Of a stretch of 64,000 bases of DNA, positions 10,112 to 64,000 are shown piece after piece. The stretch comes from Chrysemys picta bellii (lineage: Eukaryota), in NCBI RefSeq assembly GCF_011386835.1, contig NC_088803.1:35154001-35218000 (forward strand), in the 5' to 3' direction. Below the pieces are notes generated by a model. The model did no database searches and was not told where the DNA came from. It was given only the letters and a program-made list of their open reading frames with translations. Made by a program: the position numbers and the translations under genes. Position 1 is the first letter of the stretch. Every line of letters starts with the position of its first letter.

Positions 10112-10245
10112 CATAGGTGCTGGAACTAGGGGTGCGGGGGGTGCTGCAGCACCCCCTGCTTGAAGTGGTTTCCATCCCATACAGGGTTTACAGTTTGGTT
10201 TAACAGCTCTCAACACCCCACTCAAAAATTGTTCCATCACCCCCG
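10112..10245. mobile_element. Small hAT-type MITE
   Basis: 8-bp TSD GTCACTGT at 10104-10111 and 10246-10253. Confidence 0.75.
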
Positions 10246-14985: not shown

Positions 14986-21983
<6,998 letters not shown>

Positions 21984-22140
21984 CCTCCACACTTCCGCTT
22001 CCGGCCCGCTCACCCAATGGGGAGGCACTTCCGGCACCGACCATCGCGAGCCTGCCGGGAAAGGCGGGGGCGGGTCGAGAGGGTTGCTCAGGGACTTCAA
22101 GCAGAAACGGGGCGGGGCCTTAGTTCAGCCCCGTACCAGC
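21984..22140 (-). promoter_or_regulatory. PIGT CpG-island promoter
   Basis: Tandem ETS/GABP-type sites ACTTCCGCTTCCGG at 21991-22004, CACTTCCGG at 22026-22034, CCAAT at 22014-22018 and a GC box GGGGCGGGGC at 22109-22118. These lie directly upstream of the PIGT ATG in CpG-rich DNA. Confidence 0.75.
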
Positions 22141-22820
22141 AGCGTCCCCGTTGCCGCGGTGACCCTGAGTCCCCCAGCGCGCATGACGGGGTCTGGCGCG
22201 GCCGCGGGGGGGCACAGGCGCGACACACGTGCCTGTCGCGGGGCGCGCGCCGCTGCACCCCCTGGGCTTGGCCTCTCGCGCAGGGAGTTGGACCCATGTG
22301 GCTCGTCCCTTTCACAGCCCCCCATACACACTAGCACAGGGGGCGCTGCGGGCAGCTCCGGGTCTGCACGCCGCTCTCCTCAGCGGGGAGTCCCCGCTCT
22401 GGCCTGATCAGCCCTTGGGGCCGGGGAGCCCGGTTAGTGTTGCTTTCAGTGGGACATGGGCCCACCGAGAACTGACAGGACGGCGACCCACCAAGGGCCT
22501 CACGCGGGCCATGGGGCAGCGACAGAGGGGGGGCTTTGGGTCACCTTCCAGCCTGCTCTGGGACTGGACTGGATCTGATGCAGTGCCTTAGGTGCAAAAT
22601 GCTCCTTATCTTATTCCCTGCCCCGAGCTAGTTAGTACCCCTAACCTAGAGTCACACTGGAACTTGTTCCCTAGAGGTGAAGGCCTCTGGACCCCGTTGC
22701 CTAACTGCAAAGACAGATTCTCTGGCCTGTCCCAGTTCTGTGGAGTTGTCACCTTTCTTAGCTATGGATATTTTTTTGGGGTGGGGTGGGGTGGAATATA
22801 AATCAACATCTGTTTTTCAA

Positions 22821-23032
22821 AAAGAATAGGAGTACTTGTGGCACCTTAGAGACTAACAAATTTATTAGAGCATAAGCTTTCGTGGGCTACAACCCACTTC
22901 TTCGGATGCATCCGAAGAAGTGGGTTGTAGCCCACGAAAGCTTATGCTCTAATAAATTTGTTAGTCTCTAAGGTGCCACAAGTACTCCTATTCTTTTTGA
23001 GGATACAGACTAACACCGCTGCTACCCTGAAA
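22821..23032. mobile_element. Penelope-like terminal-repeat insertion forming a perfect palindrome
   Basis: 10-bp direct repeat TGTTTTTCAA at 22811-22820 and 23033-23042; 92-bp arms 22817-22908 and 22909-23000 are exact reverse complements. Confidence 0.9.
22870..22947. ncRNA. Two back-to-back hammerhead motifs (22870-22909 minus, 22908-22947 plus) with variant core CCGAAGA
   Basis: Each strand reads GCAU-CCGAAGA-A-GUGGGU(UGUA)GCCCAC-GAAA-GC-UU-AUGC. Confidence 0.7.
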
Positions 23033-24431
23033 TGTTTTTCAAGGTGATAGAACATGGATTATCCTGTGAAAATGAGTATTTTCTGATATCATATCAGAGC
23101 CAACTGGGGTCCATCTAAACCAGTGGCTTGTCTCTGACAGTGGCCTGTAGTAGATACTTTTGCAGTTGCTAAAAACACACAATAGACAGTTATGTAATAA
23201 TTTGCCCAAAGAGGAAGTTGCTTCCTAATACTGAAAGCTAATCATGGTGTCTGCTGTGAAGCTGGAAGGTTTATATTCTATAGACATGTTTACCTTAATA
23301 TATATATGGATATACATCCACCTAAGCACCTCTGAAAGCTGTGTAGGTAACTGAGTGCAGATGCCAGAGTCCATCAGTAGGAACAGGGTGTACTCTCCAC
23401 TTTGCCTTGCTTTTTTATAAATTTTTTTTACATGAAGGTAATGGCATGGAAATTCCAGTTCTAGGAGTGTGTTTGGGTTTTTAGGGCCTTTGTCACTTGC
23501 TGTCTAACATTCTACTGCTTGCTGCTGTGGCCAATATATCTGTGGTTTAGCACTGGGATTACTTGTCTAATGAATATCCTCCGGGCACCGTGTCCCTGGG
23601 TTTTGAAATCTGTTGAAAATCTCATTCTGGAGCTGTCAGTATGGATGACAGCAGACCTGACCACTTCCCTCAGCACTGAACAGATGGAGCGATAAAGCAG
23701 ATTCTGACCCTGGCAAACTTTCCCTTGTTTGAAGGGCTTGGTTAACAGGCTTATTGGCAGTTATTTAATTTCTTGTGGAGCTGGGATGTTGAGTTTGTTG
23801 CACTGTACAAGTGCCGGCACTTTTTGCTCTCTGTGCCAGTGTGAAACAACATCTCACCAGGCCTACTCTGCGAGAACATGTTCTTATTTTCTACAGGGGC
23901 TGTGTAGGCAATCATGTTTAATTCCTGCACTCATTTTTAATGTCTAATTACATTCCCCACTAGAGGGCAGACACGACACACATTTGAACCTGAAATTTTA
24001 TTGAACCATTAACCCCATGACTACATTGCAATCTCCTCAGAGTTAATGGATTATACAACACAGGGCAGGTTTAGCATCTCACTAAGAATAGTCTGACCTG
24101 CCTATCGGAGCATGGTGCAGCCTTTCAGCAAAGCTTTAACATATGCTAAAGAGCAGGATCTTACATTATAGGGTAGACACAGTGCAAGAGACCCCCCCGG
24201 TCCTGCCCTGCTTATCCTTAACTATATATAAAAGCTAATCACATCAGTTTGTATCTCAGTCTCTCAGCCAGATAAGCAGCCAAGACAAAGTGCTGTGGTT
24301 TTTCCCAGTAGATGTGTATGTAAAAAATCATTCCTAAAATACCACAGTCCAAACTTGTATCATTTCTGCCATTTCCAATGTCTGGGGCATATGCTGAATT
24401 CCAGAGTTCCCAAATGAACAAAGATAATGAA

Positions 24432-27671: not shown

Positions 27672-30600
27672 CTAGCTTCTGGCCGCCTGCGCTTCAGGAC
27701 TGTCCTCCTGGGGTTCATCCTCATCTGACTGCACCACGGGGGTCTCAGCCCCCTCCTCGCTGGTGTCCAGGCTGTTCAGGTCTGTGGACACAGAAGATGT
27801 GGACGAGATCCGGGATTTGATCTCAGCCGCATTGGGCACTTGCAGGGTGATTTCCTCCTGGTAGTGGCTGGGCTCTGCCCAAGGAGAGAGGCAAGATTAG
27901 CAGAAGAAACCAACATGCTAGCATCTTTGCAGGCCTTGTGCCCAGCCCCCTTCACCTCCACCATACCCCTCTGCAGGCAGGCTGGGCCTTCATCCCTTTC
28001 CCAGCCCATCGCAGGGGCTAGATATGTGCAGAGCGCCATTTCAGCAGGGGCAGCGACTCTGGTACACAATGTTTCTAGGCCCTTTAGGAGGAAAGGAGAT
28101 GAGGCTGGAACTATCCCTATCAGGAGAGGTGAGGGGTCGGTGGGAGTCACTGGGCTCAAAATTCTTATTGTCCATGAGCAGAGAGACATGAGCCGGCCGT
28201 AAGCAGGACTGAGCTGCTGAGCTACCGATCCCTTAGCCCGACTTTGATCCCCAGCACGAGCCAGGCTGCAGCCAGAGCCGGGTCTCCTTCCCCAGTCCCA
28301 GACTTTGGCAGCAGGGCATGTGCCTCACATTCCTTCCCCATTTTTGGCAGTGGAGCCTTTTCCGTCTCGCTTGTAAAATTCCAGCTTGGGGCCTTCATGG
28401 GTGAGGCCGTTTAACTGGCACAGAGGAGAATCTGCCGCTAAATGGCTTGACTCCTTCTCAGAGTGACTCATTCTCAGAGTCTCTGCAAGGAGCGCAGTAT
28501 GGGGTGATCAGGCTGCCGATGCCGCCTCCTCCCCCATTGGGGTCCCCCTCTCCAGGCAATGAGCTCAACACAGGGTAACTGGGGTCTGCAAGGCTCCCCA
28601 CTCCCCATGTGAGGAGCCCAGCCTGGGGCCACCACGGTGCTGACACTGCCCCCAACAGGGAGCTCAATGCAAGACAGTCAGGGTCTTGGCACCCCCACAC
28701 TTTGTGCAGAGAGCTCAGCATGGGCAATCAGAGCCCAGGGGAGCGTGAGCATGTGAGGAGTGCGGCAGGGTGTGATGGGACAGTGGCTGCTCTAGAGCAG
28801 TTTGGGGGGACAAGAATTCAGTCTTACAAACCCTAAAAAGCTCAGAGTGCACATCAGCCCTGGAAAACTTGGATCCATAATTCTCTGCTCCCAGCAATGG
28901 TGGCTGTAGTGTAGACAGGGGACAGTGTTTGTACAACAGTACCCTTCCCTAAGATTAGATGTCGTGATGCTGAAAATGCCTGTGCCCTTTCTACTCGGCA
29001 GCCTCCATTGCTCATATCGTCGATGGAGCTGTACTAGCGGAGCTGTGCTGATGTGAACTTTTCCAACCCCACAGGCCAAAGCCACAAGTTTGTTGCCCTT
29101 CAGGACTGAAGAGAATCACAGCAGGGCTTGGACTGGATCGAAGAACTGACCAGCTGGCGTGAAGGTTGGGGGGACAGCAGGGAGCAAACAAGGAGGGTTG
29201 CGAACATACCTGGCAGGAGACCGGCAACATTGTTATCCTCTGTCCCGCAGCTGAGAAACACGTCCATGGTGTCCTGGTCAGAAAGGTCCATCATCTCCAT
29301 CTGCTCCAGCATGTCCACATTCACCTCCATGGAGGAAATGCTGCCCAGCGGAGCTGCAGAGACACGGGCCAGAAAACAAGGGAGGGCCCATCACTAGTGC
29401 CAGCCAGATGAGAACCTATTAGCCCTGGACCAGCAGCACTGAGAAGCCGATGCCATGGGAGGCCAGCTTGTGGGACTAGTCTTCTGGCTTGCTTATAGTG
29501 TGAGCTCTTCAGGGCCCTTATCTTTATGACCTGTTCAGGGTTCTATAAATAACAGGTCACCCCCTCCGCACTGCCTTCCATCCCATTCTGTGTGTGACAG
29601 ACACCTCCCCCTAGCCCCGGGCGGGCGGCACTTACGTCTCCTGTGCTCTATCTGCAGGTGGGACATGGGGAAGAAGAAATCCACATCATGCTGGAAAACC
29701 TCCTCAAAGAACTTCTGCCTGTCACGTAATTTGAGCTGCTGCTGCATCTGCTCTGGCTCCAGTCCCCGCTGCCCATGCTCCATGTCAGCTGTAGAGGAAC
29801 AAGGTGGAAGATCAGGCACAGGCTAGATGCAGTCAGATGGGGCATGGGAGATCAGCCCAGGCCAAGAAGGGCTGCATAAGTCCACCCTATTCCTTCTATC
29901 AGTGTCCTGCAGGATAGGTATTGCTCTCCTGCTCTACTTTATCCATGAGGGTGCATTGTGATTTGGTAGCAATGGAAGAGGTATTACAGGCCATGGAGCT
30001 TGCTCCAGCAGTGCAATCTGTGCTGGGGGCCACTGCTACTGACTCTGCTACTGTGATACAGACCAGTCTGGTGCCCACAGCTGCAATGACCGTCTCATAC
30101 TTTGGGCTTCCCCACCTTCCTTCCAGGGTTCTCAAAGCACTCTACAAACTTTAACTCGCACCCCCTCCGTGAGAGGGGATTAGTGTTCTGTTATCCCCAT
30201 TTTCCAGAGAGGGAAACTGAGGCACGGAAAGCAGACATGACTTGCCCAGGGTCACCCAGTATCAGAGCCAGGAATAGAACCAAGTCCTCCTGACTCACAA
30301 GCCTCTACTCTAACCACTAATCAGCGGTTCTCAAACTGTGGGTCGGGACCCCCAAGTGGGTTGCAACCCCATTTTAATGGGGTCACCAGGGCCAGTCTTA
30401 GACTTGCTGGGACCCAGGGCTTGGGCTCCGTCCCCCTGTCCGTCCCCCACAGGGCAGTGGGGCTCAGGCTCCAACCCCCTTTCTTCCCCCACCCGGGGCA
30501 GCAGGGCTCAGGCTCCGGCCCTCCACCCCCGGGGTCATGTAGTAATTTTGTTGTCAGAAAGGGGTTGCGGTACAATGACGTTTCACTCCTGCCTTGCTTG

Positions 30601-49393: not shown

Positions 49394-50922
49394 TTTCCCA
49401 TCATACTGTTTAAATATGAATAGTACTATAGTAAATGAAGCAATGAATTCACACGATTGTGGCTCTTCTGGGTAATTTAGCTCCTGAACAATTGAGGTCT
49501 GAGTATCACTGCTCTGTAAACACAAAGAAATCAGGCCAGGAGCTCTGTAAGCTCAGAATGCCCCAGTCTGGTGGAAGTAGGCCTATAAGTCACAATACTC
49601 AGGTCTGTGAACTTGCCTCTCACTTTAGACCCACTCTACGCTGGTGGTCCTAGTCACCAGCTGAGGAGAGACAATCAGACACACCCAGGTTAGTTTCTGC
49701 TCCTTTCTTCAGAGCCCTGTTTATATCACCTTCAGAAAGAAAGAAGGGGGGGGGGGGGAAAGGTGTGCAAAAAAACCAACAACACAAATATCACCCTGGT
49801 CAGCATTCAGACTGGGGTCCTCTGAGTTTCAGTAGCTACCAGGAATGATCCTTTCCAACCCCTGGGGGCTCCTTAGGGCCAGCCAACCAGCCAGCTCTGG
49901 TTACTAAAGAAAACATCTCAATCCTGGCTACCCCCTTCTTTATGCATTGAGTTCTCCTTTATATTGTCTGGCTGAGAGTGTGGGGCAATCATGAAATGCT
50001 GATCAGCTGTGTCAACTGAGTCCCAGCACCTGCCTGCTGGGCTTCTCTCTGGAACAGGGTTGGTACTTGTCCCCCTTCCCCTGGACTATTAAAGGGGCAG
50101 ATTGCCCTGTTATACCCACTTTTACTTCCCTTCCCTCAAACCTATTCATTTTTATTATGAATTATTAGTATCAGAAATGCTGGCTCAGGAGAGAGGTCAC
50201 CAGAAACATTCTGTATGTAATAAATCCAAAGCCAGTTCCTTTCACGTTTCCCCACCTTTTCTCACCATGAAGACAGCTCTCCACCCCTACAGCAATACCC
50301 AGAGCCCCAGGTATTGTGCCAGGAATCATGAGAGCTCCTGGTAGTTATTTATTTATGCTTAATAATAATTAAATTTGCACGGCTACAGTCCCTTTCATCT
50401 CAGGATCTCAGCGGCTTTAAAAACATTAATGAACAAAGCCCCACAGCCTCAGGACTATTCTCATTTTATGGATGAGGAAACTAAGGCACAGACTGACTTT
50501 CTCAAGGTCACCCAGTGAGCTGATGGCAGATTGGGAGTGCCAGTCCCCTGCCCTGAATGTTTGCCGTGCTGCTCCACTTTTTGGTTTCCTATGTTAAACT
50601 GGAAACTGTCCTATCTGGGGGAGCTAGAACCCCTCACTATTGATGTTACACCCTTCTCTTTATTCCTCCCCCGGTGTGCATTACCCCCCACCCCATCTGC
50701 AACTCCCCAGCACACCCTGTCACCCTCAATATTGACATGTGGTTTCTGGTGTCACAGATAAATGAGGTCACAGCCTCTGTCTGAATTGACATCAACCCAA
50801 GACCTCAGACCCTAGGGAGGACCAGAGGCATTTCAGAGAGAGGGAGCTCCCAGGTACCTCTCAGATATCTTGCCTGTCTGCCACAGAACCTCCCATCAAA
50901 GCCCTTACAGAACTATCCCTGA

Positions 50923-53900
50923 ATGACAATGAAGGCCCCAGGGAAGAAGAAAGCCCTCATTCACCAGGTACAGTCAGTCCTTCTTCAGACCCTGTGATGA
51001 GTTGTAGTGATCCTCCTCCCTGAACCTCTTTGAAACTGGCAAAGGGAATGAATAGGTGGGGTGGGGGAAGAGAGAATTTGCCCTTAGACTGGAAGGATGT
51101 AGACTGTAAGGCTTTTGGGGCTGGGACCCGGTTTTCCTACGTGTTCTGTATAATGCTGAGCACCTTGGTGGGGCTCAACCACTAAAGCAATAACAAACAC
51201 ATGCAGTAGGGAAAGTCCCAGCATGGCCATGAATTTAAAGAAGTCTAACGTGATGCTGCACACATACTAGGGTTATCCAGCAGTGGCCTTTTAAATGTTG
51301 CACTGACTCATAGGCTCAGAGACATTAGAGATAAGAAAAAGACTGATCAGGTCCCATCTAGACACTGGTTCCCCCAGAGGACAGGGCAGGATTGTCCCCT
51401 ACAACGCATTTGCTAGTGCTTTGTCCACTCTAGTATTAAATCTATTGCCTCAAGTGTGCCTGGTCTTTTCCTTTCACAGACTGAAGATGTGAAGACTGGA
51501 GCATGTCAGCTGAGCGACATGGAACAAGAGAAGAACCATCTAAAGACAGTAAGAAGCCACCCTGGTTTTTTACATGTACCAGCCCCTGGTTGATAGGTGT
51601 CACCTTCATTACGAGGCAATAGGCACTGTAAAACTGGACGGTAGTGTGGGGTCTGTGCATGTCAGGAGCCTTGTTCCCTACCCCTCTGCAGGCTGAGCTG
51701 CAGCTCATGGACTCTTCCCATAGTTGTGTATCTGTTCGTCTCGAACGCTCCCTGGTTCTTGGCTGGAATTTAAAGGGAGGGCAAGAGTGTGCATGTCAAC
51801 ATCTCAGTGTCTCTTTCTTCTATGGGCCAAGGGCTCAGAAGGGATGCACAACTGGGGATCTGTCTGACACGCTGGCCCAAGGGGCTGGAAAGGATGTGAC
51901 TGGCCTGTAGCTTCTGCTTCCTTCTCTGGCTGTGACAACCTCATGAGATCGGAGCAGGCAATAAAGTATTTCAGCCTTTCATTCCCATTGTACCCAATCT
52001 GGCAGATACTCAAGAAGCTGTCACTGCTGAAGCTGCTGAAGAACGCTGATCACAGGATCCTCCGGCTACGTGCATTAGCTATCAGCTACTGGAAGTCACT
52101 GGCATTCCAGAAGCCTCCCAACCTCGCTGCTGTCCCCTCTGGGTGAGTCCCTGTATAACGGAATCCCTGGCTTTTTGCTTCCCTGTGACTGTCTAATGGG
52201 CACAATGCATGAACCTGAGGATGGTTACGTGATGGTGAGCTTTGTGTGAGTACATTGTGGGATGGGGAGTTTTTTCAGGCTGTGTCAGGAAGTGTGACTG
52301 GGGGAACGGGGGAAAGAAGGGGAAGTGAAAGGTGGCAGATGGTGAAATTAGCTCATTCGGAATATTTTAGGCCACCTCTCAGCCATGATTCCATGGGGCC
52401 GCAGACAGTCTGATTTCTGCTTCCGAATGCCTGATTTAAAAAGGGGGAAATGGTGTCATGCCCAGATTTCTCCAAGAAGCTAGTGCCGGAGGGCTGGAGC
52501 GATCAGGGAAAGTACTAGAGGAGACATGACCTCCATAAGTGGAATAGAGGGATTTCAAATCAAAGAAGATAGTTTTGAGCTGTATCCTGTAATGACCCCA
52601 GGGCAAGAGAGCTGTCTGGGGATGGGAGAGATGCGCTTGTACTTTGTATGCTTGGCAAGGACAGCAGCAGCAGCCCACTCTGCATAGGCTGGTTGGAGTC
52701 TGGAGAGCTGGGCGGTGGAGAAGGGAGGTACAATTGTTGAAGCAGAATGAAATGACAGTCGGGAAGAGGCTGGGAGTCAGACTGTCCCGAGTTCTAATCC
52801 TGGCTCTGTCACTTACTCAGGGGGTGGCCTTGGGCTATTTCCCCTTCTAAATCAGGCATTCAGAAACAGAATGAGCTGGACAAACTGGAGAAATGGTCTG
52901 AAGTAAATCGGATGAAATTCAATAGGGACAAATGCAAAGTACTCCACGTAGGAAGAAACAATCAGTATACAAAATGGGAAGTGACTGCCTAGGAAGGAGT
53001 ACTGTGTAAAGGGATCTGGGGATAGTGGATCACAAGCTAAATATGAGTCAACTGTGTAACAGTGTTTCAAAAAAAGCAAATTTCATTCTGGGATGTATTA
53101 GCAGCAGTGTTGTAAGCAAGACCCCAAAAGTAATTCTTCTGCTCTACTTCACGCTGATTAGGCCTCAACTGGAGTATTGTGTCCAGTTCTGGGCGCCGCA
53201 TGTCAGGAAAGATGTGGAAAAATTGGAGAAAGTCCAGAGAAGAGCAACAAAAATGATTAAAGGTCTAGAAAACATGACCTATGAGGGAAGATTGCAAAAA
53301 TTGGGTCTGTTTAGTCTAGAGAAGAGAAGACTGAGAGGGGACATGATAACAGTTTTCAAGTACATAAAAGGTTGTTACAAGGAGGAGGGAGAAAAATTGT
53401 TCTCCTTAACCTCTGAGGATAGGACAAGAAGCAACGGGCTTAAATTGCAGCAAGAGTGGTTTAGGTTGGACATTAGGAAAAACTTCCTGTCAGGGTAGTT
53501 AAACACTGGAATAATTTGCCAAGGGAGGCTGTGGAATCTCCAGCATTGGAGATTTATAAGAGCAGGTTAGACAAACACCTTTCAGGTCTAAATCAGTGGT
53601 TCTCAACCAGGTATCCAGGGTCCCCGGGGGGCTGCGAGCAGGTTTCAGGGGGTCCATCAAGCAGGGCCAGCATCAGACTCCCTGGGGCCCAGGGCAGAAA
53701 GCAGAAGTCCCATTGCATGGGGCTAAAGCCCGAGGCCCTGAGCCCCACCAACTGGGGCTGAAGCCGAAGCCTGAGCATCTTAGCTTCATGGGGCTTTCTG
53801 TGGTATGGAGCCCCAAGCAATTTCTGTTTGCTGCTGCCTAACGCTGGCTCTGGCTTTTATATGCAGAAAATCAGTAGTTGTGCAACAGGTGGGCCATGGA

Positions 53901-55008
53901 GGTTTTATAGCATGCTGGGTGGGCCTCAGAAAGAAAAAGGTTGAGAATCCCTGGTCTAGATAATACTTAGTCCATGAGTGCAGGGAACTGGACTAGATGA
54001 TCTCTCGAGGTCCCTTCCAGTCCTGCCATTCAATTTTCTAGTCATTTCACCTCTCTGTCTCAGTATCTCTGTCTGAGAAAGGAGGATAATATGAGTTCCC
54101 TCCCGGCCTCATGGGGTGCGGTGAGCCAGATTAATTAGTTAATTTCTGTCCAGTGCTCTGAACACAGAAAGCATGATGAAAATACCACGTATTTGAAATA
54201 ATGGAGGTACGTGAGGGCAGTCACAGCCCGGATCACTGTGATCATCTCTAAAACATTTTCCTTTCACGCATGTCATTGTTCCCACCTCAACCCTTTGTCC
54301 AGGCACTTGAGAGGCAACATACCAAAATAGCCAGGTCCCTCACTACAGTCACCTAGCAGGACCACATCCTTCTTTCTTCGCAGTAGCTCCTTTTCAATGC
54401 TTGCATCCTGCCCTCTGTCTCTGAGCCACTCAGATGGTTCCTCCTCTTCCTTTTTGTATTGGGGAAGGGAGTGTCTCTTGTGTGAATGGCCCCTGCATGT
54501 TTCCTTTTGGCTTCTCTCACTCCTGTGCCTAATTGCCAGAATGATCCTTACCATTCCCTGTGGGCTGCACGCTCAGTCAAAAGGGTTGTCTCTGTGGCCA
54601 GTTCCAGGAGAGCTGGGTTAAGAGGACTGTTTTACAAGCTGTTTTGGAATCTGCAGGTGGCTGGAATGGAAAACAATCATGTTTCATTTTGGATTTTGTT
54701 TTAGGACAAGTGTCTCCTCCAAGGACCCAGACAAGCCTCAAGAAGATTCTGGTGCTAGTACTGTCACCGATGCTGAGGACATGGATACAGATTCTGCAGC
54801 TGTGCAGAGTAACCTTGAGCTGCCCTTGGAAACCCAGCCTCCTGATCTGCATCAGAAGTGCTGGTTCGAAGGCCTGCCCAAGCGGCTCCACGTACCAGCT
54901 CCCAAAGTGCTCTGTAGACCAGCGACCCAGCGATGGATTAAACCCTGCTGCACTCGGTCATGTGGCGAGACTCTGGAGCACACTCTCACCATCCAGTACC
55001 AGCAGTGA
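50923..55008 (+). CDS. TP53TG5: TP53-target gene 5 protein orthologue, 4 exons, 184 aa
   Basis: Exons: 50923-50967 (MTMKAPGKKKALIHQ), 51480-51548 (TEDVKTGACQLSDMEQEKNHLKT), 52006-52142 (ILKKLSLLKLLKNADHRILRLRALAISYWKSL...) and 54705-55008 (...KCWFEGLPKRLHVPAPKVLCRPATQRWIKPCCTRSC...*). GT-AG, phases 0/0/2, 555 nt. Matches recalled human motifs VLKNLSLLKLLKSSNRRIQEL and WFEGLPTRIHLPAPRVMCRSSTLRWVKRRCTRFC. It is antisense to and upstream of DBNDD2, as in human. Exon 1 is the least certain. Confidence 0.9.
52850..54035 (+). mobile_element. CR1 LINE 3' portion interrupted by a MITE
   Basis: ORF 53025-53498 ([28 protein letters not shown]) plus a CR1 3' UTR that resumes after 53953. Confidence 0.92.
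53594..53953. mobile_element. hAT-type MITE nested in CR1
   Basis: Termini CAGTGGTTCTCAACC / GGTTGAGAATCCCTG, near-TSD GTCTAAAT / GTCTAGAT; same family as 47834. Confidence 0.85.
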
Positions 55009-56349
55009 CAGTGTCTGTTCCTTGTAAGCTTCCAGACGCTGGCTTTCGACTGAAGAGAAAATCTCTGGCATCCCCCTGTAACTTTCTCTCCTAGGCATTG
55101 AGTCACTGCGACTTTCTCTCCCCTAGCCAGGCTGGATCCTTCTTAATCCTGTCAATGGCCAGAGGGAGTCACTGCAGAGACAGCTGAGGTGCTTCCCCCG
55201 CATCTTGCTGCCTGTGCACTGCCACGATTCCTAGCCCTTGCTGGCCCTGGGAAGCTGGAGATTGAATGAGGGACCTAACCTGGAATCGTCTATGCAGCAG
55301 CATGACGAGCGGCAGCTGGACTAGCATGGGGGTCCCCTCTTCTATAGATTCTTATACCCCACTCCTCACCACAGTATCGAAGCACCTAGAATTTTCATCC
55401 CCCCCCCCCAGCCATGGTGTCAGGGGAATTTGAACCCAGCCACGCTAGCAATACAAGCAAGAGCTGTGCCCCGAGGCCACTTTTAATACTTTTCTGTTTT
55501 CCTTCCATAGCTAGACACTCTTGTCTCAGCCACTCAGCACAGACGGGGCAGGGCAAATTGGGTCAATCCAGTGCAGAGCTTGTAGGTGTCTCCTTGAATT
55601 CTTTGCTGAGGTTATTCCCAATAACGGCAGTGCCTGACCCATGTCATCAGTTGGGCCTATTCTTATCTCAGTACTCATTATATAGAACCATACATACGCA
55701 GGGCACTTTGCCAGTCTAGTAAAGACAATCTCTGCCATGTAGGGCTCACATTCGAAGTCTGCTCTTCTTGATTGTGAGTAACACATCGCCCCTAACAGAA
55801 TACATTCCCTCCCCAGGTAGGAGGTCACCCCACAGTAACAGGACCTTCCCCCCTTTGATGAAGTCCCATCATTCCCATCAACACTAATAGGATTATGACG
55901 GATATAATTATCATCCGCATTAGCTCTGTCCCAGCATGAAGCATGCAGATTCCAAGGCGGATAAGCAGCTAAGCTACCCTCTCGCTCTGGGTTGGTGTTT
56001 AGGCCTAGAGAAACCCCAATCACTGCACTCGATGATACTTCTCTCTAGAGAAACAGCACCGATGTTTGTTTTCCTTTCAGGGCTTGCAGATGTTCTGAGC
56101 TGGGCAGACACTGAGATGAGGTTTCGAGAGAAAGATCAGCTGAGTGATGCACTGATCCATAATTCTACAAATAAAGGGAATAATCTGCATCCTTCAGACA
56201 CAAAATGTGTCTCTAGCATTTGTCAAAGTGGGAGCTGATTGGATTGAGTTTGGCAAAGGTGGCCAAAGGTGTAGTTTCCACCTCCCTTGCATTCACAGCA
56301 ATGCAGATCTCTGAAGAGTGGGCTGGAATGAACACTCTGGTTGTTGACA

Positions 56350-56560
56350 GGTTTCAGAGCGGTAGCCGTGTTAGTCTGTATCAGCAAAAACAACGAGGAG
56401 TCCTTGTGGCACCTTAGAGACTAACAAATTTATTTGGGCATAAGCTTTCGTGGGCTAAAACCCACTTCATCAGATGCATGGAGTGGAAAATACAGTAGGG
56501 AGGTATAAATACACAGCATATGAAAAGATGGGAGTTGCCTTACCAAGTGGGGGGGGTCAA
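56350..56560 (-). mobile_element. Penelope-like terminal repeat fragment
   Basis: Same repeat family as 1280 and 45647. Confidence 0.85.
56438..56477 (-). ncRNA. Minimal hammerhead ribozyme motif, intact core
   Basis: Minus: GCAU-CUGAUGA-A-GUGGGU(UUUA)GCCCAC-GAAA-GC-UU-AUGC. Confidence 0.8.
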
Positions 56561-58539
56561 AGCAGTCACTTGAACTTCTTCTCGCTATAATAGGTAACTT
56601 TAATCCCCGTTGTAACTTTGTAACTCCACTAAAGTCAGTGGCATTATTTCAGGGATGGATTTAGGTCAGTATGCTATCTTTAAATGAAACCCAAAGAGGA
56701 GCTCAATAGTTTACCAGCAAATGAGTTCCTTCTCCTAAACCAACAGTACTAGCAGGTGGTCATTTTTATGATCTCCTTCCATGGAGGGTTCTACTCTCTG
56801 GGTCAGGAGGAAGAGCATTTCCTGGGACCTCCTTGGCCCAAAGAGCTTTCGTTTCCCCTAATCCACAGATCCAGGAGGGAATAGAAAACAACACAATCCT
56901 GTGCCCATCTCCCACTTCCAGAAGGCCTTGACACTGGTCACAGATAGGGTTAATGTGACTATAGTAACACGTGAAACATGCAGCAATGTGACGTCACACA
57001 GGCTGAACTGTGACACTCCCAGACCATGAAGTGATGTCATCAAAGTGGGCAGAAAAGAGCTTGTCTGGGCAAAGGTTAGATTCTGCCCTCATTTCCACCA
57101 GTGTAAATGAAAAGTGACCCTCACTCACATCAATGGAGCCTAATATAAACAAGAGCAGATGCAGAATCAGGCCCTAGCTATGCAAAATGTTGTATGATCC
57201 CCCAACACACACAGGTTAGAGTGATGGAAACAACTATGGGCAGGTTTATTTCTGTGATAACATCTACTAAGGCCTTGATCTTGCGAAGACTTACACATGT
57301 GCTTAACTTTATTTACTTCAGTTAAGTTAATGGAACTACTTACAGTGCATAAAGTTAAGCATGTGCATAAGGGTTTGCAGGATTGGGACCTCCAGGAAAA
57401 AAATCACCTAGAACCTGAAAGATCATTGAGAATTATGAATTCATTATGAATGATTATCTGTGTATAAAACGTGTGGTGCTAAAGAATCATTCTTAACAAA
57501 TAAATACATAAACACTTTGTTATTGTAGGGTTGCTTATAAGGGCTGACCTGCACACGCTGGTTTATTATGAATTGTTATTTATGTGTTTGTTCATATTGA
57601 GGTAACTCCCGGGGCCCCCAGCCATAGATCAGGGCCTCCCTGTGCTAGGCACTGTACAAACAAAGAACAAAGAGGTGGGCCCTGCCCAAAGAGTTTAGAA
57701 TCTAAGTTTAAAACAAGAGACAACAGGTGGATGTGATAAACAGAGTGAGCCCAAGGAAACAATGCAATGATACTAGTCAGCATGATAAACGGTGGTCACA
57801 GCTGCTTAGCCCATGCTATTGGCATCAAGGCAAAGGTTTGTTACTGCAGGTTGCTTATGAGTGCAGACCCACTGCCATTGGTTTGGTTTTACATAAACAT
57901 TTGCAGAAGCTTTTAAACCAGCGACAATCTGCATAGAAAAGGGGCACTTGAATTTCCTCAATTTTCTAATCCCTTTTCCCCATTAAACATATGAGAAGCA
58001 GCCAGCAGGTGGCACTAGGATTTTACATTGCAATTCAATTCAATTGGTGTGGTAAGTTACCCAAGAGTGGCCAAGCCTAAGGAAAAAGACAAGACATCTC
58101 AGGTGTGTGAGGTTGGAGTGGGCACCACCTGCGCAGGCTGGGTCACACAGGGTGTTTGGAGTTTGATCCCTTGTGTCCATTTGTCATTCCAGATCAGGTT
58201 ATCAGCCAGGATGGTTTTTCTATTAGGGCCTGATCTGAAGTGTGTTGAAAAAAAATTAATGGAGATATCCCATCTCCTAGAACTGGAAGGGACCTTGAAA
58301 GGTCATCGAGTCCAGCCCCTGCCTTCACTAGCAGGACCAAGTACAGTAGGCTCCCTTTGGATCATGTCCTTAGTCTCCTATACCCCTTGCCATCTCCATG
58401 CTTCAATCGCTGCTGCTCCCTTTGCTCCCTTTCCTACCTCTGGCTTTGCTGCCCTGTATACTTAACTGAGAACGTCACATGGCAATTCCCTGCTGCTGCT
58501 GAGTGTTCTGATTTCTTCAGTTCATCATCATTACTGTTA

Positions 58540-58880
58540 CTATTTATTTGTATTGCAGTACAACCTAGGAGCCGCAAACATGGGCCAGAATCCCATTGTG
58601 CTTGATGCTGTACAAGCACAATACAAAAAGTCCCTGCCCCAAAGAGCTTACAATACAAGACTAAAATGAGAGCCATCAGATGGATACAGCAGACAGACAA
58701 GGCAGTACAAACAATGAGACCTACAATATTGGTCAACATGGCAGGCAGTGGTCTCAGCACACCAGCAGCCTAACTGTTGCCAAATATGTTGTAGGCATCA
58801 GGACAAATGAGAGTTTTAAGGAAGGATTTGAAGGAGGACAGAAGTGGTTTTGCACATTTACAGGGAGCCCCTCTTCTCCT
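58540..58880 (+). mobile_element. Old interspersed repeat, probably an L2-type 3' end
   Basis: TGTACAA.CACA..ACAAAAAG.TCCCTGCCCCAAAGAGCTTACAAT motif, recurring at about 45570-45645 and 57600-57860. Confidence 0.55.
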
Positions 58881-60101
58881 TTCATAGAGCAGTTGGTGGC
58901 TAGAAAAATTCCTTCCACAGTCTGCATGAAGCCCCATGTGCCCACCTGTGAACACGAAGGGGAGGGTGCATGAGAGGGAGAAGCAGGGTGGGGGGGGGTG
59001 ACAGGTGTTTGTGTGCGCGGGCGTGTGTGTGTTTGGGAGGGGGTGTTTGTGATAGGATCTGTATGTTTGTAAGGGAGTGTAAGCGTGTGTGTACATGGGA
59101 TGTGTGTGTACGTGAGATGGGATCTGTATGATTGTAAGGGAGTGTGAGCGTGTGTGTACATGGGGGGTGTTTCTGTGTGCCACCCGGCGTTTGTACACCA
59201 GGTTACACCTTACACTAGGTTTGTAAGGGTGTGTACCTGAGTGCCAGGCAGCATGACCACAGAAGACCCTTATATTCAATACCTTTCTCCTGAGTCTCTC
59301 CTCTGGACCATTCTTAGCTGGCTCCCAGTGCTGCTCTTCAGAGAAATTTCCTGCTGCCCTTCCTCTGGAAGCCAGAGCCCAACATGCCACCCGCTGGAGA
59401 CGCCAGGAGGGGCCACATCACTCTGGGGAGGATTGTTAAGAACGCCCAAGGCTGGGAACTAATCCACCTGCCTGCTAATGCACTTTCCAGGGTCTTCTGA
59501 TGCGAAGTCCCTCTCTTACAGAGCCTGCAACGAGCCAGTTCCACCTGCGCTTCACCAGGGATCGATTTTGGGGGGTGTATGTGCGTGAGACTATTAATAC
59601 CCCCCAGTATTTCCTACCCCCGCCCCCATCCCTTGAGCTCAGCGCTCACACGGGCTCTGGCTATTCCTCTCCATCCGGAGACAGGTGTGGGGATGGCGGG
59701 GCTGTGGGAGGGGCAGGGAGATGGGGGAGAAGAAGGGGATGGGGAAGGAGCTGAACTCTCCAGATGCCTGAGCCGCCCAGCTCTGCAGGACCAGGGAAGG
59801 GGGCTTCCCATGGCTAGGTATTAAGGAGACTCCCCGCGGGGTTCCCCAACCCCCTGGAAGCTGCACTGGCGGGCGGGGGCATCACACAGCAGGGACCGAG
59901 CGGCCAGGGGGAGAACCCCCGGGAAATGCAAAGGGCTTGAGAGGCAGCTGGAGCCGGGCGCTGCGCGGGGCTCGGGGAAGCGGGAACAGCGATCGCGGAG
60001 TTTCCAGGACCATGAACTCCCCTTGCAGCGGGGGGCTGCTGCTGATCCCGGGCACGGAGCCGCGCCGGAGCCCCTGAGGAGCGGAGCCGCCGGAGAAGGC
60101 G

Positions 60102-60144
60102 ATGGGCCAGTGGCTGGGCACGGCGCTGCTGCTCCTCACGCTGG
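60102..60144 (+). CDS. Probable first coding exon of a secreted or membrane protein (signal peptide MGQWLGTALLLLTL, phase 1); possibly neuritin family
   Basis: GCG-ATG-G start, hydrophobic LLLLTL core and a G|GTAAGG donor at 60145, inside a CpG island (about 59600-60600). No further exons were recognised in the window. Confidence 0.6.
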
Positions 60145-60916
60145 GTAAGGAACGGGCAGCGCGGGCGGCTCCGGTCCCGCAGGAGACACGCTCGAACCGG
60201 GCGCCGGGGAAGCCAGGCAGGGACCGGCCCCTCAGCAATAGGGCAGAGTCCCGCTGGGGGACAGCACCGCCCCGGCGGGGTCACCCCAGCGCAGCCGGCG
60301 GTGGCGCCCCCTGGCGCTGAGCTGCGGGGCTGCCGCGGTGCGCCCGGAGCCTGGAGGCGCCTCCAGCCCAGGCTGCCCTTGGGGGCGGCTTCCGCCTGGG
60401 AGGGGGAGCGGGGGGCGTGTGGCCCGCAGTGGGCACCGCGAGTTACATCCGCCACCCAGACCCAGGCAGCCCCTGGCTGCAGCTTTCCCGAGCTCATCCC
60501 TTGGTGTGACGCGCCCAACCTCCGGGGGCAGCCGGTGGCCCTTCCCATCTTAACCCCGAGCCCAGCCTGGGCAGGGGAGCAGGAACCTCCCCCGGGCCCT
60601 TCCTGCTGGGGGAGTTAGTGGGTCGCAATTGCCGTGGAAATTACGGAGGTGGCTGCATTTCAGCTGCTCTCAGCTGGGGCAGAGAGGTCCCCTCTCCATG
60701 CAGGGCCCCTGGGGCTGGGCCCCACATGGGCGCCCACGAGAATATAGTATTCTATGGTATTGCAACTTTTTTTAATGGAATGGGCCCCCAAAATTGCTTT
60801 GCCCCAAGCCCCCTGAATCCTCTGGGCAGCCCTGTTTCCATGGGAGAGGGCACAGAGGATGTCATACCCCTCTGCATGGAGCACTGCAGTTGGCTCTGAG
60901 CTCTGCTGGTTGGTTA

Positions 60917-61650
60917 GCCAGGAATAGGATCTCTTCTCACGGGTCACAGAGGGACAGGCACACAATAGAGACACAATAAACTAAGCACCTGTCACCAGAG
61001 CAGCCTCTTCTCTCCCATCCTTTTCATAGTGAAAGAATCCTAGATTCCAAGGCCAGAAAGGCCCATTGGGATCATCATAGAATATCAGGGTTGGAAGGGA
61101 CCTCAGGAGGTCATCTAGTCCAACCCCCTTCCACCCCTCCCTGCTCAAAGCAGGACCAAATTGCCAACTAAATCATCCCAGCATGGGCTTTGTCAAGCCT
61201 GATCTTAAAAACCTCTAAGGAAGGAGATTCCATCACCTCCCTAGGTAACCCAGTCCAGTGCTTCACCACCCTCCTAGTGAAAAGCCAGGAATAGGATCTC
61301 TTCTCACGGGTCACAGAGGGACAGGCACACAATAGAGACACAATAAACTAAGCACCTGTCACCAGAGCAGCCTCTTCTCTCCCATCCTTTTCATAGTGAA
61401 AGAATCCTAGATTCCAAGGCCAGAAAGGCCCATTGGGATCATCATAGAATATCAGGGTTGGAAGGGACCTCAGGAGGTCATCTAGTCCAACCCCCTTCCA
61501 CCCCTCCCTGCTCAAAGCAGGACCAAATTGCCAACTAAATCATCCCAGCATGGGCTTTGTCAAGCCTGATCTTAAAAACCTCTAAGGAAGGAGATTCCAT
61601 CACCTCCCTAGGTAACCCAGTCCAGTGCTTCACCACCCTCCTAGTGAAAA
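60917..61650. repeat. Exact 367-bp tandem duplication (60917-61283 / 61284-61650)
   Basis: The two copies appear identical by eye. Confidence 0.93.
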
Positions 61651-61666
61651 AGTTTTTCCTAATATC

Positions 61667-62970
61667 ATAGAATCATAGAATATCAGAGTTGGAAGGGACC
61701 TCAAGAGGTCATCTAGTCCAACCCCCTGCTCAAAGCAGGACCAATTCCCAGCTAAATCATCCCAGCCAGGGCTTTGTCAAGCCGGGCCTTAAAAACCTCC
61801 AAGGAAGGAGATTCCACCACCTCCCTAGGTAACGCATTCCAGTGTTTCACCACCCTCCTAGTGAAATAGTTTTTCCTGATATCCAACCTGGACCTCCCCC
61901 ACCGCAACTTGAGACCATTGCTCCTTGTTCTGTCATCTGCCACCACTGAGAACAGCCGAGCTCCATCCTCTTTGGAACCCCCCTTCAGGTAGTTGAAGGC
62001 TGCTATCAAATCCCCCCTCATTCTTCTCTTCTGGAGACTAAACAATCCCAGTTCTCTCAGCCTCTCCTCATAAGTCATGTGCTCCAGACCCCTAATCATT
62101 TTTGTTGCCCTCCGCTGGACTCTTTCCAATTTTTCCACATCCTTCTTGTAGTGTGGGGCCCAAAACTGGACACAGTATTCCAGATGAGGCCTCACCAATG
62201 TCGAATAAAGGGGAACGATCACGTTCCTCGATCTGCTGGCAATGCCCCTACTTATACAGCCCAAAATGCCGTTAGCCTTCTTGGCAACAAGAGCACACTG
62301 TTGACTCATATCCAGCTTCTCATCCACTGTGACCCCTAGGTCCTTTTCAGCAGAACTGCTACCTAGCCATTCGGTCCCTAGTCTGTAGCAGTGCATGGGA
62401 TTCTTCCGTCCTAAGTGCAGGACTCTGCACTTGTCCTTGTTGAACCTCATCAGGTTTTTTTCTGCCCAATCCTCTAATTTGTCTAGGTCCCTCTGTATCC
62501 GATCCCTACCCTCTAGTGTATCTACCACACCTCCTAGTTTAGTGTCATCTGCAAACTTGCTGAGAGTGCAGTCCACACCATCCTCCAGATCATTAATAAA
62601 GATATTAAACAAAACCGGCCCCAGGTCCGACCCTTGGGGCACTCCACTTGAAACCGGCTGCCAACTAGACATGGAGCCATTGATCACTACCCGTTGAGCC
62701 CGACGATCTAGCCAGCTTTCTATCCACCTTACAGTCCATTCATCCAGCCCATACTTCTTTAACTTGGTGGCAAGAATACTGTGGGAGACCGTATCAAAAG
62801 CTTTGCTAAAGTCAAGGAATAACACATCCACTGCTTTCCCCTCATCCACAGAGCCAGTTATCTCCTCATAGAAGGCAATTAGGTTAATCAGGCATGACTT
62901 GCCCTTGGTGAATCCATGCTGACTGTTCCTGATCACTTTCCTCTCCTTTAAGTGCTTCAGAATTGATTCT
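61667..62970 (-). mobile_element. Young 5'-truncated CR1 LINE with uninterrupted ORF2 RT/C-terminal frame
   Basis: ORF 61752-62975 (407 aa) with [45 protein letters not shown] and SKFADDTKL; the ATTCTATG tail reads ATAGAATCATAGAAT on the plus strand at about 61667. Confidence 0.97.
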
Positions 62971-63564
62971 ATCATCTGACCTCCGGCATAGCACAGACCA
63001 GAGAACTTCCCCTAAATAGTTCCCAGAGCAGAGCTTTTAAGAAAACATCCAATCAATTAAAAAATGGTCAGGGATAGAGAATACAGCACATACAGACCGT
63101 GGTAAATGGTTAGTTACTCTCACTGTTAAAAGTGCCTTATTTCCTGTCTGAATTGCTCTAGCTACAACTTTCAGCCTTTGGATTCTGTTAGACTGTTCTC
63201 TGCTGGACTGAAGAGCCCATTAACAACTATTTGTTCCTCATTTCGGTACTTATAAACTAATCAAGTCACCCTTTAATCCTCTCTTTGTTAAACTAATAGA
63301 TTGAGCTCCTTGAGAGGCGGTCACTATAAGGCAGGGTTTCTAATCCTTTAATCATTCTCCTGGCTCTTCTCTGAACCCGCTCCAATTTATCAACATCCAT
63401 CTTGAATTGCAGACCCCAGACCTAGACTTAGTGTTCCAGCAGCAGTTACACCAGTGCCAGAAACAACGGTAAAATAACGTCTGTACTCTTATTCATCCAA
63501 GGATTGCATTAGTCCTTTTGACCCCAGCATCACACTGGGAGCTCATGTATAGCTGGTTATCCAC
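62971..63564 (-). mobile_element. Older CR1 LINE, host of the nested insertions; its 3' tip lies at about 61038-61076
   Basis: Degraded CR1 3' sequence that joins naturally to ..GGCCAGAAAGGCCCATTGGGATCATC if the intervening CR1s are removed. Confidence 0.75.
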
Positions 63565-64000
63565 AGGGCCGGCTTTAGGCCGATTCGGCTGAATTGGGCC
63601 CCACGCTAAGAGGGCCCCGCGCCGCAGCTCTCCACCCTGCCCCCAGCTCACTTCCCCCTCCTCCCCTCCCCTGAATGCTCCGCCCCCTGCTCCTCCCCCT
63701 CCCCTGCTTCCCGCGAATCAGAGGTTCGCGGGAAGTCTGAAAAGAAGCAGGGGCGGGCAGGCAGCACCAGAGAACCCGGGGTGGTGGGGGGCGCGAGAAG
63801 GGCTCCGGGGAGGCATGGCCTAGTCCGGCCCCGGTTCCGGCCGAGTGCGCCGGCCTGCGGCGCAGCTCCGGCCCAACCCGCGGCGCGGCTTCGGCTCCGG
63901 CCGGCGCGGCTTCGGGTCCGGCCCGGCCCCCGCGCCGCCAAGGGGCTCTGGGCCGGCCCCAAGCCCGGCGAACACGGCCGGAGTGCGGCTTGATTCCTGG
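63565..64000. mobile_element. GC-rich hAT-type non-autonomous transposon running off the window
   Basis: Starts CAGGGCCGGCTTTAGG with C-rich and CCGG-rich internal repeats like the other hAT-type MITEs. Confidence 0.55.

What the first reader, a model, noticed from the sequence alone, without database searches (positions are those of the whole stretch)
59600..60600. Signal-peptide first exon of a gene absent from the human locus: candidate third neuritin paralogue
Seen: a CpG island with ATG-GGC-CAG-TGG... encoding MGQWLGTALLLLTL, then a phase-1 GTAAGG donor, on the plus strand downstream of TP53TG5. Established: in human SYS1 follows TP53TG5 directly with no secreted-protein gene between them. 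The dysbindin family (DTNBP1 on 6p, DBNDD1 on 16q, DBNDD2 on 20q) marks a paralogon in which NRN1 (6p) and NRN1L (16q) also lie, and as recalled NRN1 starts with a short phase-1 signal exon. Inference: this may be a 20q-equivalent neuritin-like gene lost in mammals. Fourteen residues cannot prove this.
Basis: inference. Interest (0 to 1): 0.7.

Follow-up and report, generated by a model that had tools for sequence, protein, structure and literature searches.

The report
First exon of third neuritin gene
The short exon is real: it is the first coding exon of a painted-turtle gene already annotated as "neuritin-like", a third member of the neuritin nerve-growth-factor family that lies between TP53TG5 and SYS1 in fish, reptiles, birds and a marsupial, and for which I found no intact placental-mammal copy.

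Summary
Observation confirmed; interpretation essentially right. ATG 60102, 14 codons plus one base, and a GTAAGG donor at 60145 sit in a CpG island. An in-frame stop lies 27 nt upstream.

The window is Chrysemys picta bellii: L008 matches it at 100%. RefSeq's "neuritin-like" protein (P0293, 138 aa) starts exactly at 60102. Exons 2 and 3 lie 1.2 and 9.9 kb beyond the window end. P0293 scores 141 bits against Pfam NRN1 (cut-off 27). It has the six invariant cysteines, a hydrophobic N-terminus and C-terminal tail, and the family's three-exon, phase-1/phase-2 structure.

The order TP53TG5(+), neuritin-like(+), SYS1(-) holds in two sea turtles, chicken and tammar wallaby. Alligator keeps the TP53TG5 side and the teleost Anabas the SYS1 side.

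A tree gives four jawed-vertebrate clades, ((NRN1, this clade), (NRN1L, a fourth clade)). Support for this clade is moderate and AU tests do not reject alternatives, so orthology rests mainly on synteny.

Two corrections. The gene is not lost in all mammals, because a marsupial keeps it; no intact placental copy was seen. It is not unannotated either, because public databases list it in more than 100 species. Three full-text searches found no paper describing it.

It is ordinary as an object, mildly interesting as evolution.

The parts
59700..60600 (.). CpG island and presumed promoter around exon 1
   Evidence: GC is 0.70-0.75 and CpG observed/expected is 0.69. Promoter function is inferred.
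59706..60101 (+). 5' untranslated part of exon 1 (minimum extent)
   Evidence: Logan contigs from runs guessed to be RNA lie on 59706-59976 and 59781-60145. The transcript start itself is not mapped.
60012..60077 (+). Upstream ORF of 21 codons, in frame with the main ATG, ending at TGA 60075-60077
   Evidence: Read directly from the sequence. No function was tested.
60102..60144 (+). Coding part of exon 1 of the neuritin-like gene: 14 codons plus 1 nt, encoding most of the signal peptide
   Evidence: Identical to the first 43 nt of the CDS of P0293 (XP_023960891.2, Chrysemys picta bellii). L008:10001-10043 equals window 60102-60144 at 100%. Conserved in other turtles and chicken.
60145..60150 (+). 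GTAAGG splice donor, intron phase 1
   Evidence: The same donor is present in Trachemys, Eretmochelys, Natator and Gallus. A contig stops here.
60145..64000 (+). First 3.86 kb of intron 1, which is 5076 nt long in total. Exon 2 lies at window-equivalent 65221-65368, outside the window.
   Evidence: Exon map of P0293 on L008, with window coordinate = L008 coordinate + 50101.
60916..61650 (.). Two tandem 368-bp copies (60916-61283 and 61283-61650) inside intron 1
   Evidence: 100% self-match seen through L008 and in the sequence.
61752..62975 (-). CR1-type LINE reverse-transcriptase ORF (407 aa) inserted in intron 1. It explains why exon 2 is pushed out of the window compared with sea turtles.
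   Evidence: ORF list. Very high repeat depth in the runs. This stretch is absent from the collinear alignment with L001. The CR1 assignment is by eye from the translation.
50923..55008 (+). TP53TG5, the upstream neighbour
   Evidence: Gene call L008:822-4907, 184 aa, Pfam PF15331, mapped to the window.

Best explanation
Window 60102-60144 is the first coding exon of the painted-turtle gene that RefSeq calls "neuritin-like" (138 aa).

Structure, which is shown:
- Exon 1 carries the start codon and most of a cleavable signal peptide, and ends in a phase-1 donor.
- Exon 2 lies 5.1 kb downstream, outside the window. Exon 3 lies 8.6 kb further on.
- Exons 2 and 3 encode the six-cysteine, all-helical neuritin domain and a hydrophobic C-terminal tail.

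Mode of action, which is inferred from NRN1 and NRN1L:
- The protein enters the secretory pathway.
- Its tail is exchanged for a GPI anchor.
- It sits on, or is shed from, the cell surface as a small ligand of the neuritin type, which promotes neurite growth and neuronal survival.

Evolution:
- The gene is neither NRN1 nor NRN1L. It is a third, ancient family member and the sister of NRN1.
- Its conserved position is between TP53TG5 and SYS1.
- It is kept in ray-finned fishes, coelacanth, reptiles, birds and at least one marsupial.
- No intact placental-mammal copy was found.
For: Same genome:
- L008 (Chrysemys picta bellii CM062330.1) matches window 50102-64000 at 100% over 13,899 nt.
- P0293 begins with the 15 residues read from the window.
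- Its exons map to L008 10001-10043, 15120-15267 and 23846-24071, with GT-AG introns of phases 1 and 2.

Family:
- Pfam NRN1 (PF15056) scores 141.1 bits against a cut-off of 27. Exons 2 and 3, searched separately by reference, score 44.6 and 85.4 bits.
- Six cysteines are invariant across 64 family members.
- Mean hydropathy is 2.1-2.4 at both ends of the protein.
- The same three-exon, phase-1/phase-2 layout occurs in paddlefish NRN1 and in a gar gene of the fourth clade.

Position:
- TP53TG5(+), neuritin-like(+), SYS1(-) in Chrysemys, Natator, chicken chr20 with DBNDD2 and wallaby.
- TP53TG5 plus neuritin-like in alligator.
- Neuritin-like plus SYS1 in Anabas.

Tree:
- Four jawed-vertebrate clades rooted on cyclostomes, arranged ((NRN1, this clade), (NRN1L, clade 4)).
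- Support is 90/87 for this clade and 99/96, 100/97 and 99/95 for the others.
- NRN1L and clade 4 share an insertion before the tail that NRN1 and this clade lack.

Transcription:
- Contigs cover 59706-60145 and stop at the donor.
Against: - RNA evidence is weak. The runs are only guessed to be RNA, they are contigs rather than reads, and the 7 letters beyond the donor were not shown. No tissue is known.
- Signal-peptide cleavage and GPI anchoring rest on hydropathy and on analogy. No predictor or experiment was available.
- The sequence tree alone does not settle orthology. AU tests do not reject placing the wallaby protein, or the sauropsid proteins, with NRN1 (p = 0.18 and 0.17).
- Absence from placentals comes from protein databases and the literature, not from a search of placental genomes.
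- No amphibian or cartilaginous-fish member was seen, and I cannot say whether that reflects loss or sampling.
Confidence: 0.93

Rival explanations
1. The exon is the signal-peptide exon of syndecan-4 (SDC4). In the human gene order read in reverse, SDC4 is the next plus-strand secreted-protein gene after SYS1.
For: This was my own prior. Human order, from established knowledge, is SDC4(-), SYS1(+), TP53TG5(-), DBNDD2(+), PIGT(+). The window holds PIGT(-), DBNDD2(-) and TP53TG5(+).
Against: SYS1 lies further right and begins only at L008:33302, about 23 kb beyond this exon. No SYS1 exon lies between TP53TG5 and the CpG island. The exons spliced to this one encode a neuritin domain.
Confidence: 0.01
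2. The exon is a chance ATG plus GT in a GC-rich CpG island, with no coding function. The island would serve another gene or an unstable transcript.
For: GC-rich DNA gives many long open frames here on both strands. Fourteen residues alone carry little information. The RNA evidence is weak.
Against: The ATG, reading frame and donor are conserved from turtles to chicken. Annotated proteins of more than 100 species start with the homologous exon. The three exons reproduce the stored 138-aa protein exactly.
Confidence: 0.02
3. The gene is a relocated or lineage-specific duplicate of NRN1, not an ancient third paralogue dating from the early vertebrate genome duplications.
For: It is the sister of NRN1 (93/85) and is 46% identical to paddlefish NRN1. 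AU tests do not reject joining the sauropsid copies or the wallaby copy to NRN1. No cartilaginous-fish or amphibian member was seen.
Against: The same clade, next to the same neighbour SYS1, occurs in a teleost, sauropsids and a marsupial. A reedfish and a coelacanth member also exist. The duplication therefore predates the bony-vertebrate ancestor. Bona fide NRN1 co-orthologues keep different neighbours, of the LYRM4, PPP1R3G and RPP40 type. The ((A,B),(C,D)) shape with cyclostomes outside is what two rounds of duplication would give.
Confidence: 0.15

Closest known systems
NRN1 (neuritin, CPG15)
   Same: Pfam PF15056 domain, six cysteines, similar size (138 aa here, 142 aa in paddlefish NRN1), and hydrophobic N-terminal and C-terminal ends. 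Three coding exons with intron phases 1 and 2. It is the sister clade in the tree.
   Different: Only 46% identical to paddlefish NRN1. Different locus: TP53TG5/SYS1 here, against neighbours of the LYRM4, PPP1R3G and RPP40 type for an NRN1-clade gene. Birds have both genes. No functional data exist for this gene.
NRN1L (neuritin-like protein, CPG15-2)
   Same: Same family, cysteine pattern and exon logic. RefSeq gives the turtle gene a nearly identical name, "neuritin-like".
   Different: About 35% identity. NRN1L has an extra stretch before the tail (T-N-Q-E-T-L type) that this gene lacks. It forms a separate clade with 100/97 support. The similar name in databases invites confusion, but the two are not orthologues.
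Teleost genes labelled "neuritin 1b"
   Same: The percomorph and salmonid genes that Ensembl and UniProt label "Neuritin 1b" (Anabas, Hucho and others) belong to this clade. In Anabas the gene lies next to SYS1.
   Different: The milkfish and cyprinid genes that NCBI labels "neuritin 1b" are in the NRN1 clade. The milkfish gene has 6p25-type neighbours. One name therefore covers two different genes.
Fourth neuritin clade (lungfish, coelacanth, sturgeon, bowfin, gar)
   Same: Same domain and exon phases.
   Different: It is the sister of NRN1L, carries the NRN1L-type insertion, and was not seen in tetrapods. The turtle gene is not a member.

Membership tests
Neuritin family (Pfam PF15056) | Domain match above Pfam's gathering score | tested here: met
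   P0293 scores 141.1 bits against a cut-off of 27. Exon 2 alone scores 44.6 bits and exon 3 alone 85.4 bits.
Neuritin family (Pfam PF15056) | Six conserved cysteines | tested here: met
   C27, C37, C63, C72, C80 and C108 are invariant in alignments of 14 and 64 family members.
Neuritin family (Pfam PF15056) | N-terminal signal peptide carried by a short first exon ending in phase 1 | tested here: met
   Exon 1 holds 43 coding nt and ends in phase 1. First exons of 40-55 nt in phase 1 occur in NRN1-clade and clade-4 genes. The hydrophobic core has mean hydropathy 2.1-2.3. The cleavage site was not predicted with a dedicated tool.
Neuritin family (Pfam PF15056) | C-terminal GPI-attachment signal | tested here: inconclusive
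   A hydrophobic tail of about 15 residues (hydropathy up to 2.4) follows a Ser/Asn-rich stretch. No GPI predictor or assay was available.
NRN1 orthologue | Falls in the NRN1 clade and in NRN1-type synteny | tested here: not met
   It forms a separate clade; NRN1 has 99/96 support without it. Its neighbours are TP53TG5 and SYS1, not the LYRM4, PPP1R3G and RPP40 type. AU tests alone do not exclude a placement with NRN1.
NRN1L orthologue | Falls in the NRN1L clade and has the NRN1L-type insertion before the tail | tested here: not met
   The NRN1L clade has 100/97 support without it. The insertion is absent.
Third neuritin clade (TP53TG5/SYS1-linked) | Lies between TP53TG5 and SYS1 on the TP53TG5 strand | tested here: met
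   Seen in Chrysemys, Natator, chicken and wallaby. Partial arrangements are seen in alligator and Anabas.

The most novel reading that the evidence does not exclude
The vertebrate neuritin family began as four ohnologues, arranged ((NRN1, TP53TG5/SYS1-linked gene), (NRN1L, a fourth gene)). The NRN1 sister survives in fishes, sauropsids and marsupials but was lost or decayed in placentals, so the two-gene family described from mouse and human is a reduced state. The third gene has never been studied functionally and is hidden behind inconsistent names ("neuritin-like", "neuritin 1b", "TP53TG5 isoform X3"). It could mask or modify neuritin phenotypes in chick and fish models.
Probability: 0.7. 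Interest if true: 0.4.

Novelty: already known. Interest (0 to 1): 0.33.

Why it matters
The object itself, an annotated gene of a known family, is ordinary. The useful points are these.

- The published view that neuritin has a single paralogue comes from mouse and human. Most other vertebrates carry a third gene that is closer to NRN1 than NRN1L is, and some fishes carry a fourth.
- Chick, lizard, turtle and many fish models therefore have an unstudied NRN1 sister gene. Studies of neuritin function, redundancy and knock-outs in those models should take it into account.
- Database names for the gene are inconsistent and partly wrong. One label covers two genes in fishes, and chicken and guinea fowl file the protein under TP53TG5.
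- The case shows that a paralogon argument applied to 14 residues can predict a gene correctly.

Tried and rejected
- SDC4 exon 1 was my first guess. The position of SYS1 and the downstream exons rejected it.
- I looked for SYS1 exons on the minus strand of 55-60 kb and found none. SYS1 lies beyond the window.
- I looked for exon 2 inside the window, in 60146-64000. It is not there. A CR1 insertion and a tandem duplicate lengthen intron 1 compared with sea turtles.
- Read laying found no spliced joint, because exon 2 is outside the 6 kb that could be laid. Only a contig end at the donor was seen.
- The scan's earlier notes held nothing on neuritin, SYS1, SDC4 or TP53TG5.
- No solved structure matches by sequence.
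- An AlphaFold2 model (mean pLDDT 78.7, all-helical) had no Foldseek match in the PDB below E = 0.5.
- The neighbours of the gar clade-4 gene (NLR-type and 7TM genes) told me nothing about its paralogon.
- AU tests did not reject alternative placements, so the tree cannot stand alone.
- P0252 is an unnamed 201-aa product whose middle part resembles exon 3 of this clade, but with one family cysteine replaced. The tool withheld its locus. I took it as possibly human or human-like, left it out of all later alignments and searches, and draw no conclusion from it.
Exons were searched by reference, and whole-protein searches used database records (P0009, P0293).

Full report
**1. The observation**

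The sequence shows ATG at 60102, 14 codons reading MGQWLGTALLLLTL, one further G at 60144, and GTAAGG from 60145, which makes a phase-1 donor. An in-frame TGA at 60075-60077 closes the frame 27 nt upstream of the ATG. That TGA ends a 21-codon upstream ORF that starts at 60012. The exon sits in a CpG island with GC of 0.70-0.75 and CpG observed/expected of 0.69.

**2. Gene map of the window**

PIGT and DBNDD2 lie on the minus strand. ORF pieces at 14986-15318, 16990-17319 and 21708-22100 are recognisable as PIGT, and the piece at 29535-29819 as DBNDD2 (recognised from my own knowledge of those proteins).

TP53TG5 lies on the plus strand. Its last-exon ORF, 54622-55005, hits turtle TP53TG5 proteins (PF15331) with E down to 1e-64. 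No SYS1-like piece lies on the minus strand between 55 and 60 kb.

From the human gene order I first expected the exon to belong to SDC4. That turned out to be wrong.

**3. Transcription**

Four runs of the same organism, guessed but not recorded as RNA, hold 30-40% of the words of 59700-60500. When laid on 58001-64000, two contigs stand out:

- One lies on 59706-59976.
- One lies on 59781-60145 and carries 7 further letters that do not fit the genome.

Depth over 60201-60600 is zero. An alignment that runs one base past 60144 is what a splice to an exon beginning with G would produce, and exon 2 begins with GG. This is consistent with use of the donor but is not proof. The runs are contigs, their RNA status is a guess, and the loose letters were not displayed.

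**4. What the exon belongs to**

I looked up the hawksbill turtle TP53TG5 protein with 10 kb of flank. The result showed a called gene starting about 6.7 kb downstream on the same strand, with a product of 138 aa that matches Pfam PF15056 (NRN1). That locus (L001) is collinear with window 50-63.5 kb at 85-91% identity. Its first exon reads MGQRLGTVLLLLTLG, and 2.3 kb further on it holds an exon with the neuritin signature K-C-E-N-I-Y-Q-G-F-S-N-C-V-L-K-L-G.

A word search with that exon, and then with the flatback-turtle full-length protein P0009, gave 195 hits. Among the 120 listed were proteins named "neuritin-like", "neuritin" or "neuritin 1b" in turtles, crocodilians, birds, squamates, the coelacanth and teleosts.

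Members of the 90% cluster around the Gopherus protein include Trachemys and Chrysemys proteins (P0290 and P0293). Both begin with exactly the 15 residues read from the window.

**5. Same genome**

The locus of P0293 (L008; Chrysemys picta bellii, GCA_011386835.2, CM062330.1) is identical to window 50102-64000 over 13,899 nt with no mismatch. The window is therefore painted turtle, and a window coordinate equals the L008 coordinate plus 50101.

The CDS of RefSeq XP_023960891.2 starts at window 60102. Its exons are as follows:

| Exon | L008 coordinates | Window-equivalent coordinates |
|---|---|---|
| 1 | 10001-10043 | 60102-60144 |
| 2 | 15120-15267 | 65221-65368 |
| 3 | 23846-24071 | 73947-74172 |

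The introns are GT-AG, with phases 1 and 2. Exons 2 and 3 therefore lie 1.2 and 9.9 kb beyond the window end.

Intron 1 is longer here than in sea turtles. It contains a CR1-type element (reverse-transcriptase ORF 61752-62975, minus strand) and a 368-bp tandem duplicate.

The exons were scanned by reference, and whole-protein searches used the database's own records.

**6. Family membership**

- P0293 scores 141.1 bits against Pfam NRN1, whose cut-off is 27. Exons 2 and 3 alone score 44.6 and 85.4 bits.
- Six cysteines are invariant across 64 family members.
- Both ends of the protein are hydrophobic, with mean hydropathy 2.1-2.4. The tail follows a Ser/Asn-rich stretch, as in GPI-anchored neuritin. 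The GPI anchor itself is inferred.
- The three-exon layout with phases 1 and 2 and a first exon of 40-55 nt is shared by chicken, Anabas and Natator genes of this clade, by paddlefish NRN1 and by a gar gene of the fourth clade.
- An AlphaFold2 model is all-helical with mean pLDDT 78.7. It has no sequence or fold match among solved structures.

**7. Which neuritin**

An exhaustive HMMER search of 1.84 billion representatives found 171 family members. I placed 44 well-covered sequences in a maximum-likelihood tree rooted on hagfish and lamprey. It shows four jawed-vertebrate clades:

| Clade | Support | Members sampled |
|---|---|---|
| NRN1 | 99/96 | duck, mammals, fishes, paddlefish, a frog |
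| NRN1L | 100/97 | snake, mammal, fishes and others |
| Fourth clade | 99/95 | lungfish, coelacanth, sturgeon, bowfin, gar |
| The turtle gene's clade | 90/87 | sauropsids, teleosts, coelacanth, tammar wallaby |

The shape is ((NRN1, turtle clade) 93/85, (NRN1L, fourth clade) 90/67). NRN1L and the fourth clade share an insertion before the tail that the other two lack.

With only 140 columns, AU tests do not reject joining the wallaby or the sauropsid proteins to NRN1 (p = 0.18 and 0.17). The tree alone is therefore not decisive.

**8. Synteny settles orthology**

- TP53TG5(+), neuritin-like(+), SYS1(-) is found in Chrysemys, Natator, chicken chromosome 20 with DBNDD2 just upstream, and the tammar wallaby.
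- The alligator shows TP53TG5 plus neuritin-like.
- The teleost Anabas shows neuritin-like plus SYS1.
- By contrast, the milkfish gene that NCBI names "neuritin 1b" is in the NRN1 clade. Its neighbours have the domains of LYRM4, PPP1R3G and RPP40, which I recall as neighbours of NRN1 in the human 6p25 region.

The duplication that produced the turtle gene is therefore older than the common ancestor of bony vertebrates. An origin in the two early vertebrate genome duplications is inferred from two things. One is the tree shape.

**9. Mammals**

The wallaby protein (132 aa; Pfam 103.9 bits; all six cysteines; long branch) shows that the gene is not lost in all mammals.

Of the 150 listed representatives, 31 fell in this clade by best BLAST match, and none of those could be assigned to a placental. 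A 2026 paper states that NRN1L is the only paralogue of NRN1 in the mouse and human genomes, citing Fujino et al. 2008 (PMC12877949).

One unnamed 201-aa product (P0252) resembles exon 3 of this clade but has one family cysteine replaced. Its locus was withheld by the tool. I treated it as possibly human-like, did not save, compare or search it further, and draw no conclusion from it. The human interval itself was not examined.

**10. Novelty**

The gene is annotated in this genome and in well over a hundred others, so it is not a new object. Three full-text searches found no paper that describes a third neuritin paralogue or its loss. The single apparent gene-name hit that I opened referred to cell clones.

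Database names are inconsistent:

- RefSeq uses "neuritin-like", which is easily confused with NRN1L.
- "Neuritin 1b" is used both for this clade and for true NRN1 duplicates.
- Chicken and guinea fowl file the protein as "TP53-target gene 5 protein isoform X3/X2".

**11. Verdict**

Two corrections apply: a marsupial keeps the gene, and the gene is already annotated. How the protein works (secreted, GPI-anchored, neuritin-type ligand) is inferred from family membership. No expression site or function is known.

Noticed in passing
window 60916-61650: Two adjacent 368-bp copies (60916-61283 and 61283-61650), 100% identical, lie in intron 1 just left of the CR1 element. This looks like a very recent tandem duplication or an assembly duplicate.
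   Followed up: partly
window 63550-64000 (continues to about 64150 by L008:13450-14050): A patch of about 500 bp with 70-76% GC lies inside intron 1. It is not aligned to the hawksbill locus L001. Contigs from the guessed-RNA runs lie on 63644-63743 with several mismatches, so it may be a repeat or an unannotated internal promoter.
   Followed up: no
window 60012-60077: A 21-codon upstream ORF lies in the 5' leader, in frame with the main ATG and closed by TGA 27 nt before it. Further short upstream ATGs lie at about 59765, 59811 and 59927, if the transcript starts as far left as the contigs suggest.
   Followed up: no
L003 (chicken chr20) 7327-12682; proteins P0038, P0047: RefSeq files the chicken and guinea-fowl neuritin-clade proteins as "TP53-target gene 5 protein isoform X3/X2". 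The two adjacent same-strand genes seem to have been merged, or joined by read-through transcripts.
   Followed up: partly
L004 (Anabas) and L010 (Chanos); proteins P0081, P0150, P0151: The label "neuritin 1b" covers two different genes. In Anabas, Hucho and other species (Ensembl/UniProt) it sits on the SYS1-linked clade. In milkfish and a cyprinid (NCBI) it sits on an NRN1-clade duplicate with 6p25-type neighbours.
   Followed up: yes
proteins P0145, P0154, P0183, P0286, P0158; locus L007: A fourth neuritin clade, sister to NRN1L, occurs in sturgeon, lungfish, bowfin, gar and coelacanth and was not seen in tetrapods. The coelacanth model is fused to a BCAR1-like protein of 701 aa.
   Followed up: partly
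L001 (Eretmochelys), whole locus; wallaby locus: In the hawksbill, the SYS1 and dysbindin-domain gene models both span the entire 24-kb locus on the minus strand, across TP53TG5 and the neuritin-like gene. This resembles the SYS1-DBNDD2 read-through known in human. In the wallaby, a 299-aa SYS1 model overlaps the neuritin-like gene on the opposite strand.
   Followed up: no
L008:22415-22627 (window-equivalent about 72516-72728) and window 22820-23032: A 92.6% identical inverted copy of the stretch that holds the hammerhead palindrome noted upstream of PIGT lies in intron 2 of the neuritin-like gene. That element is therefore a dispersed repeat, not a one-off.
   Followed up: partly
protein P0252 (locus withheld): An unnamed 201-aa product has a middle part that resembles exon 3 of this neuritin clade but lacks one family cysteine. 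The tool withheld its DNA. I took it as possibly human-like and did not pursue it.
   Followed up: no
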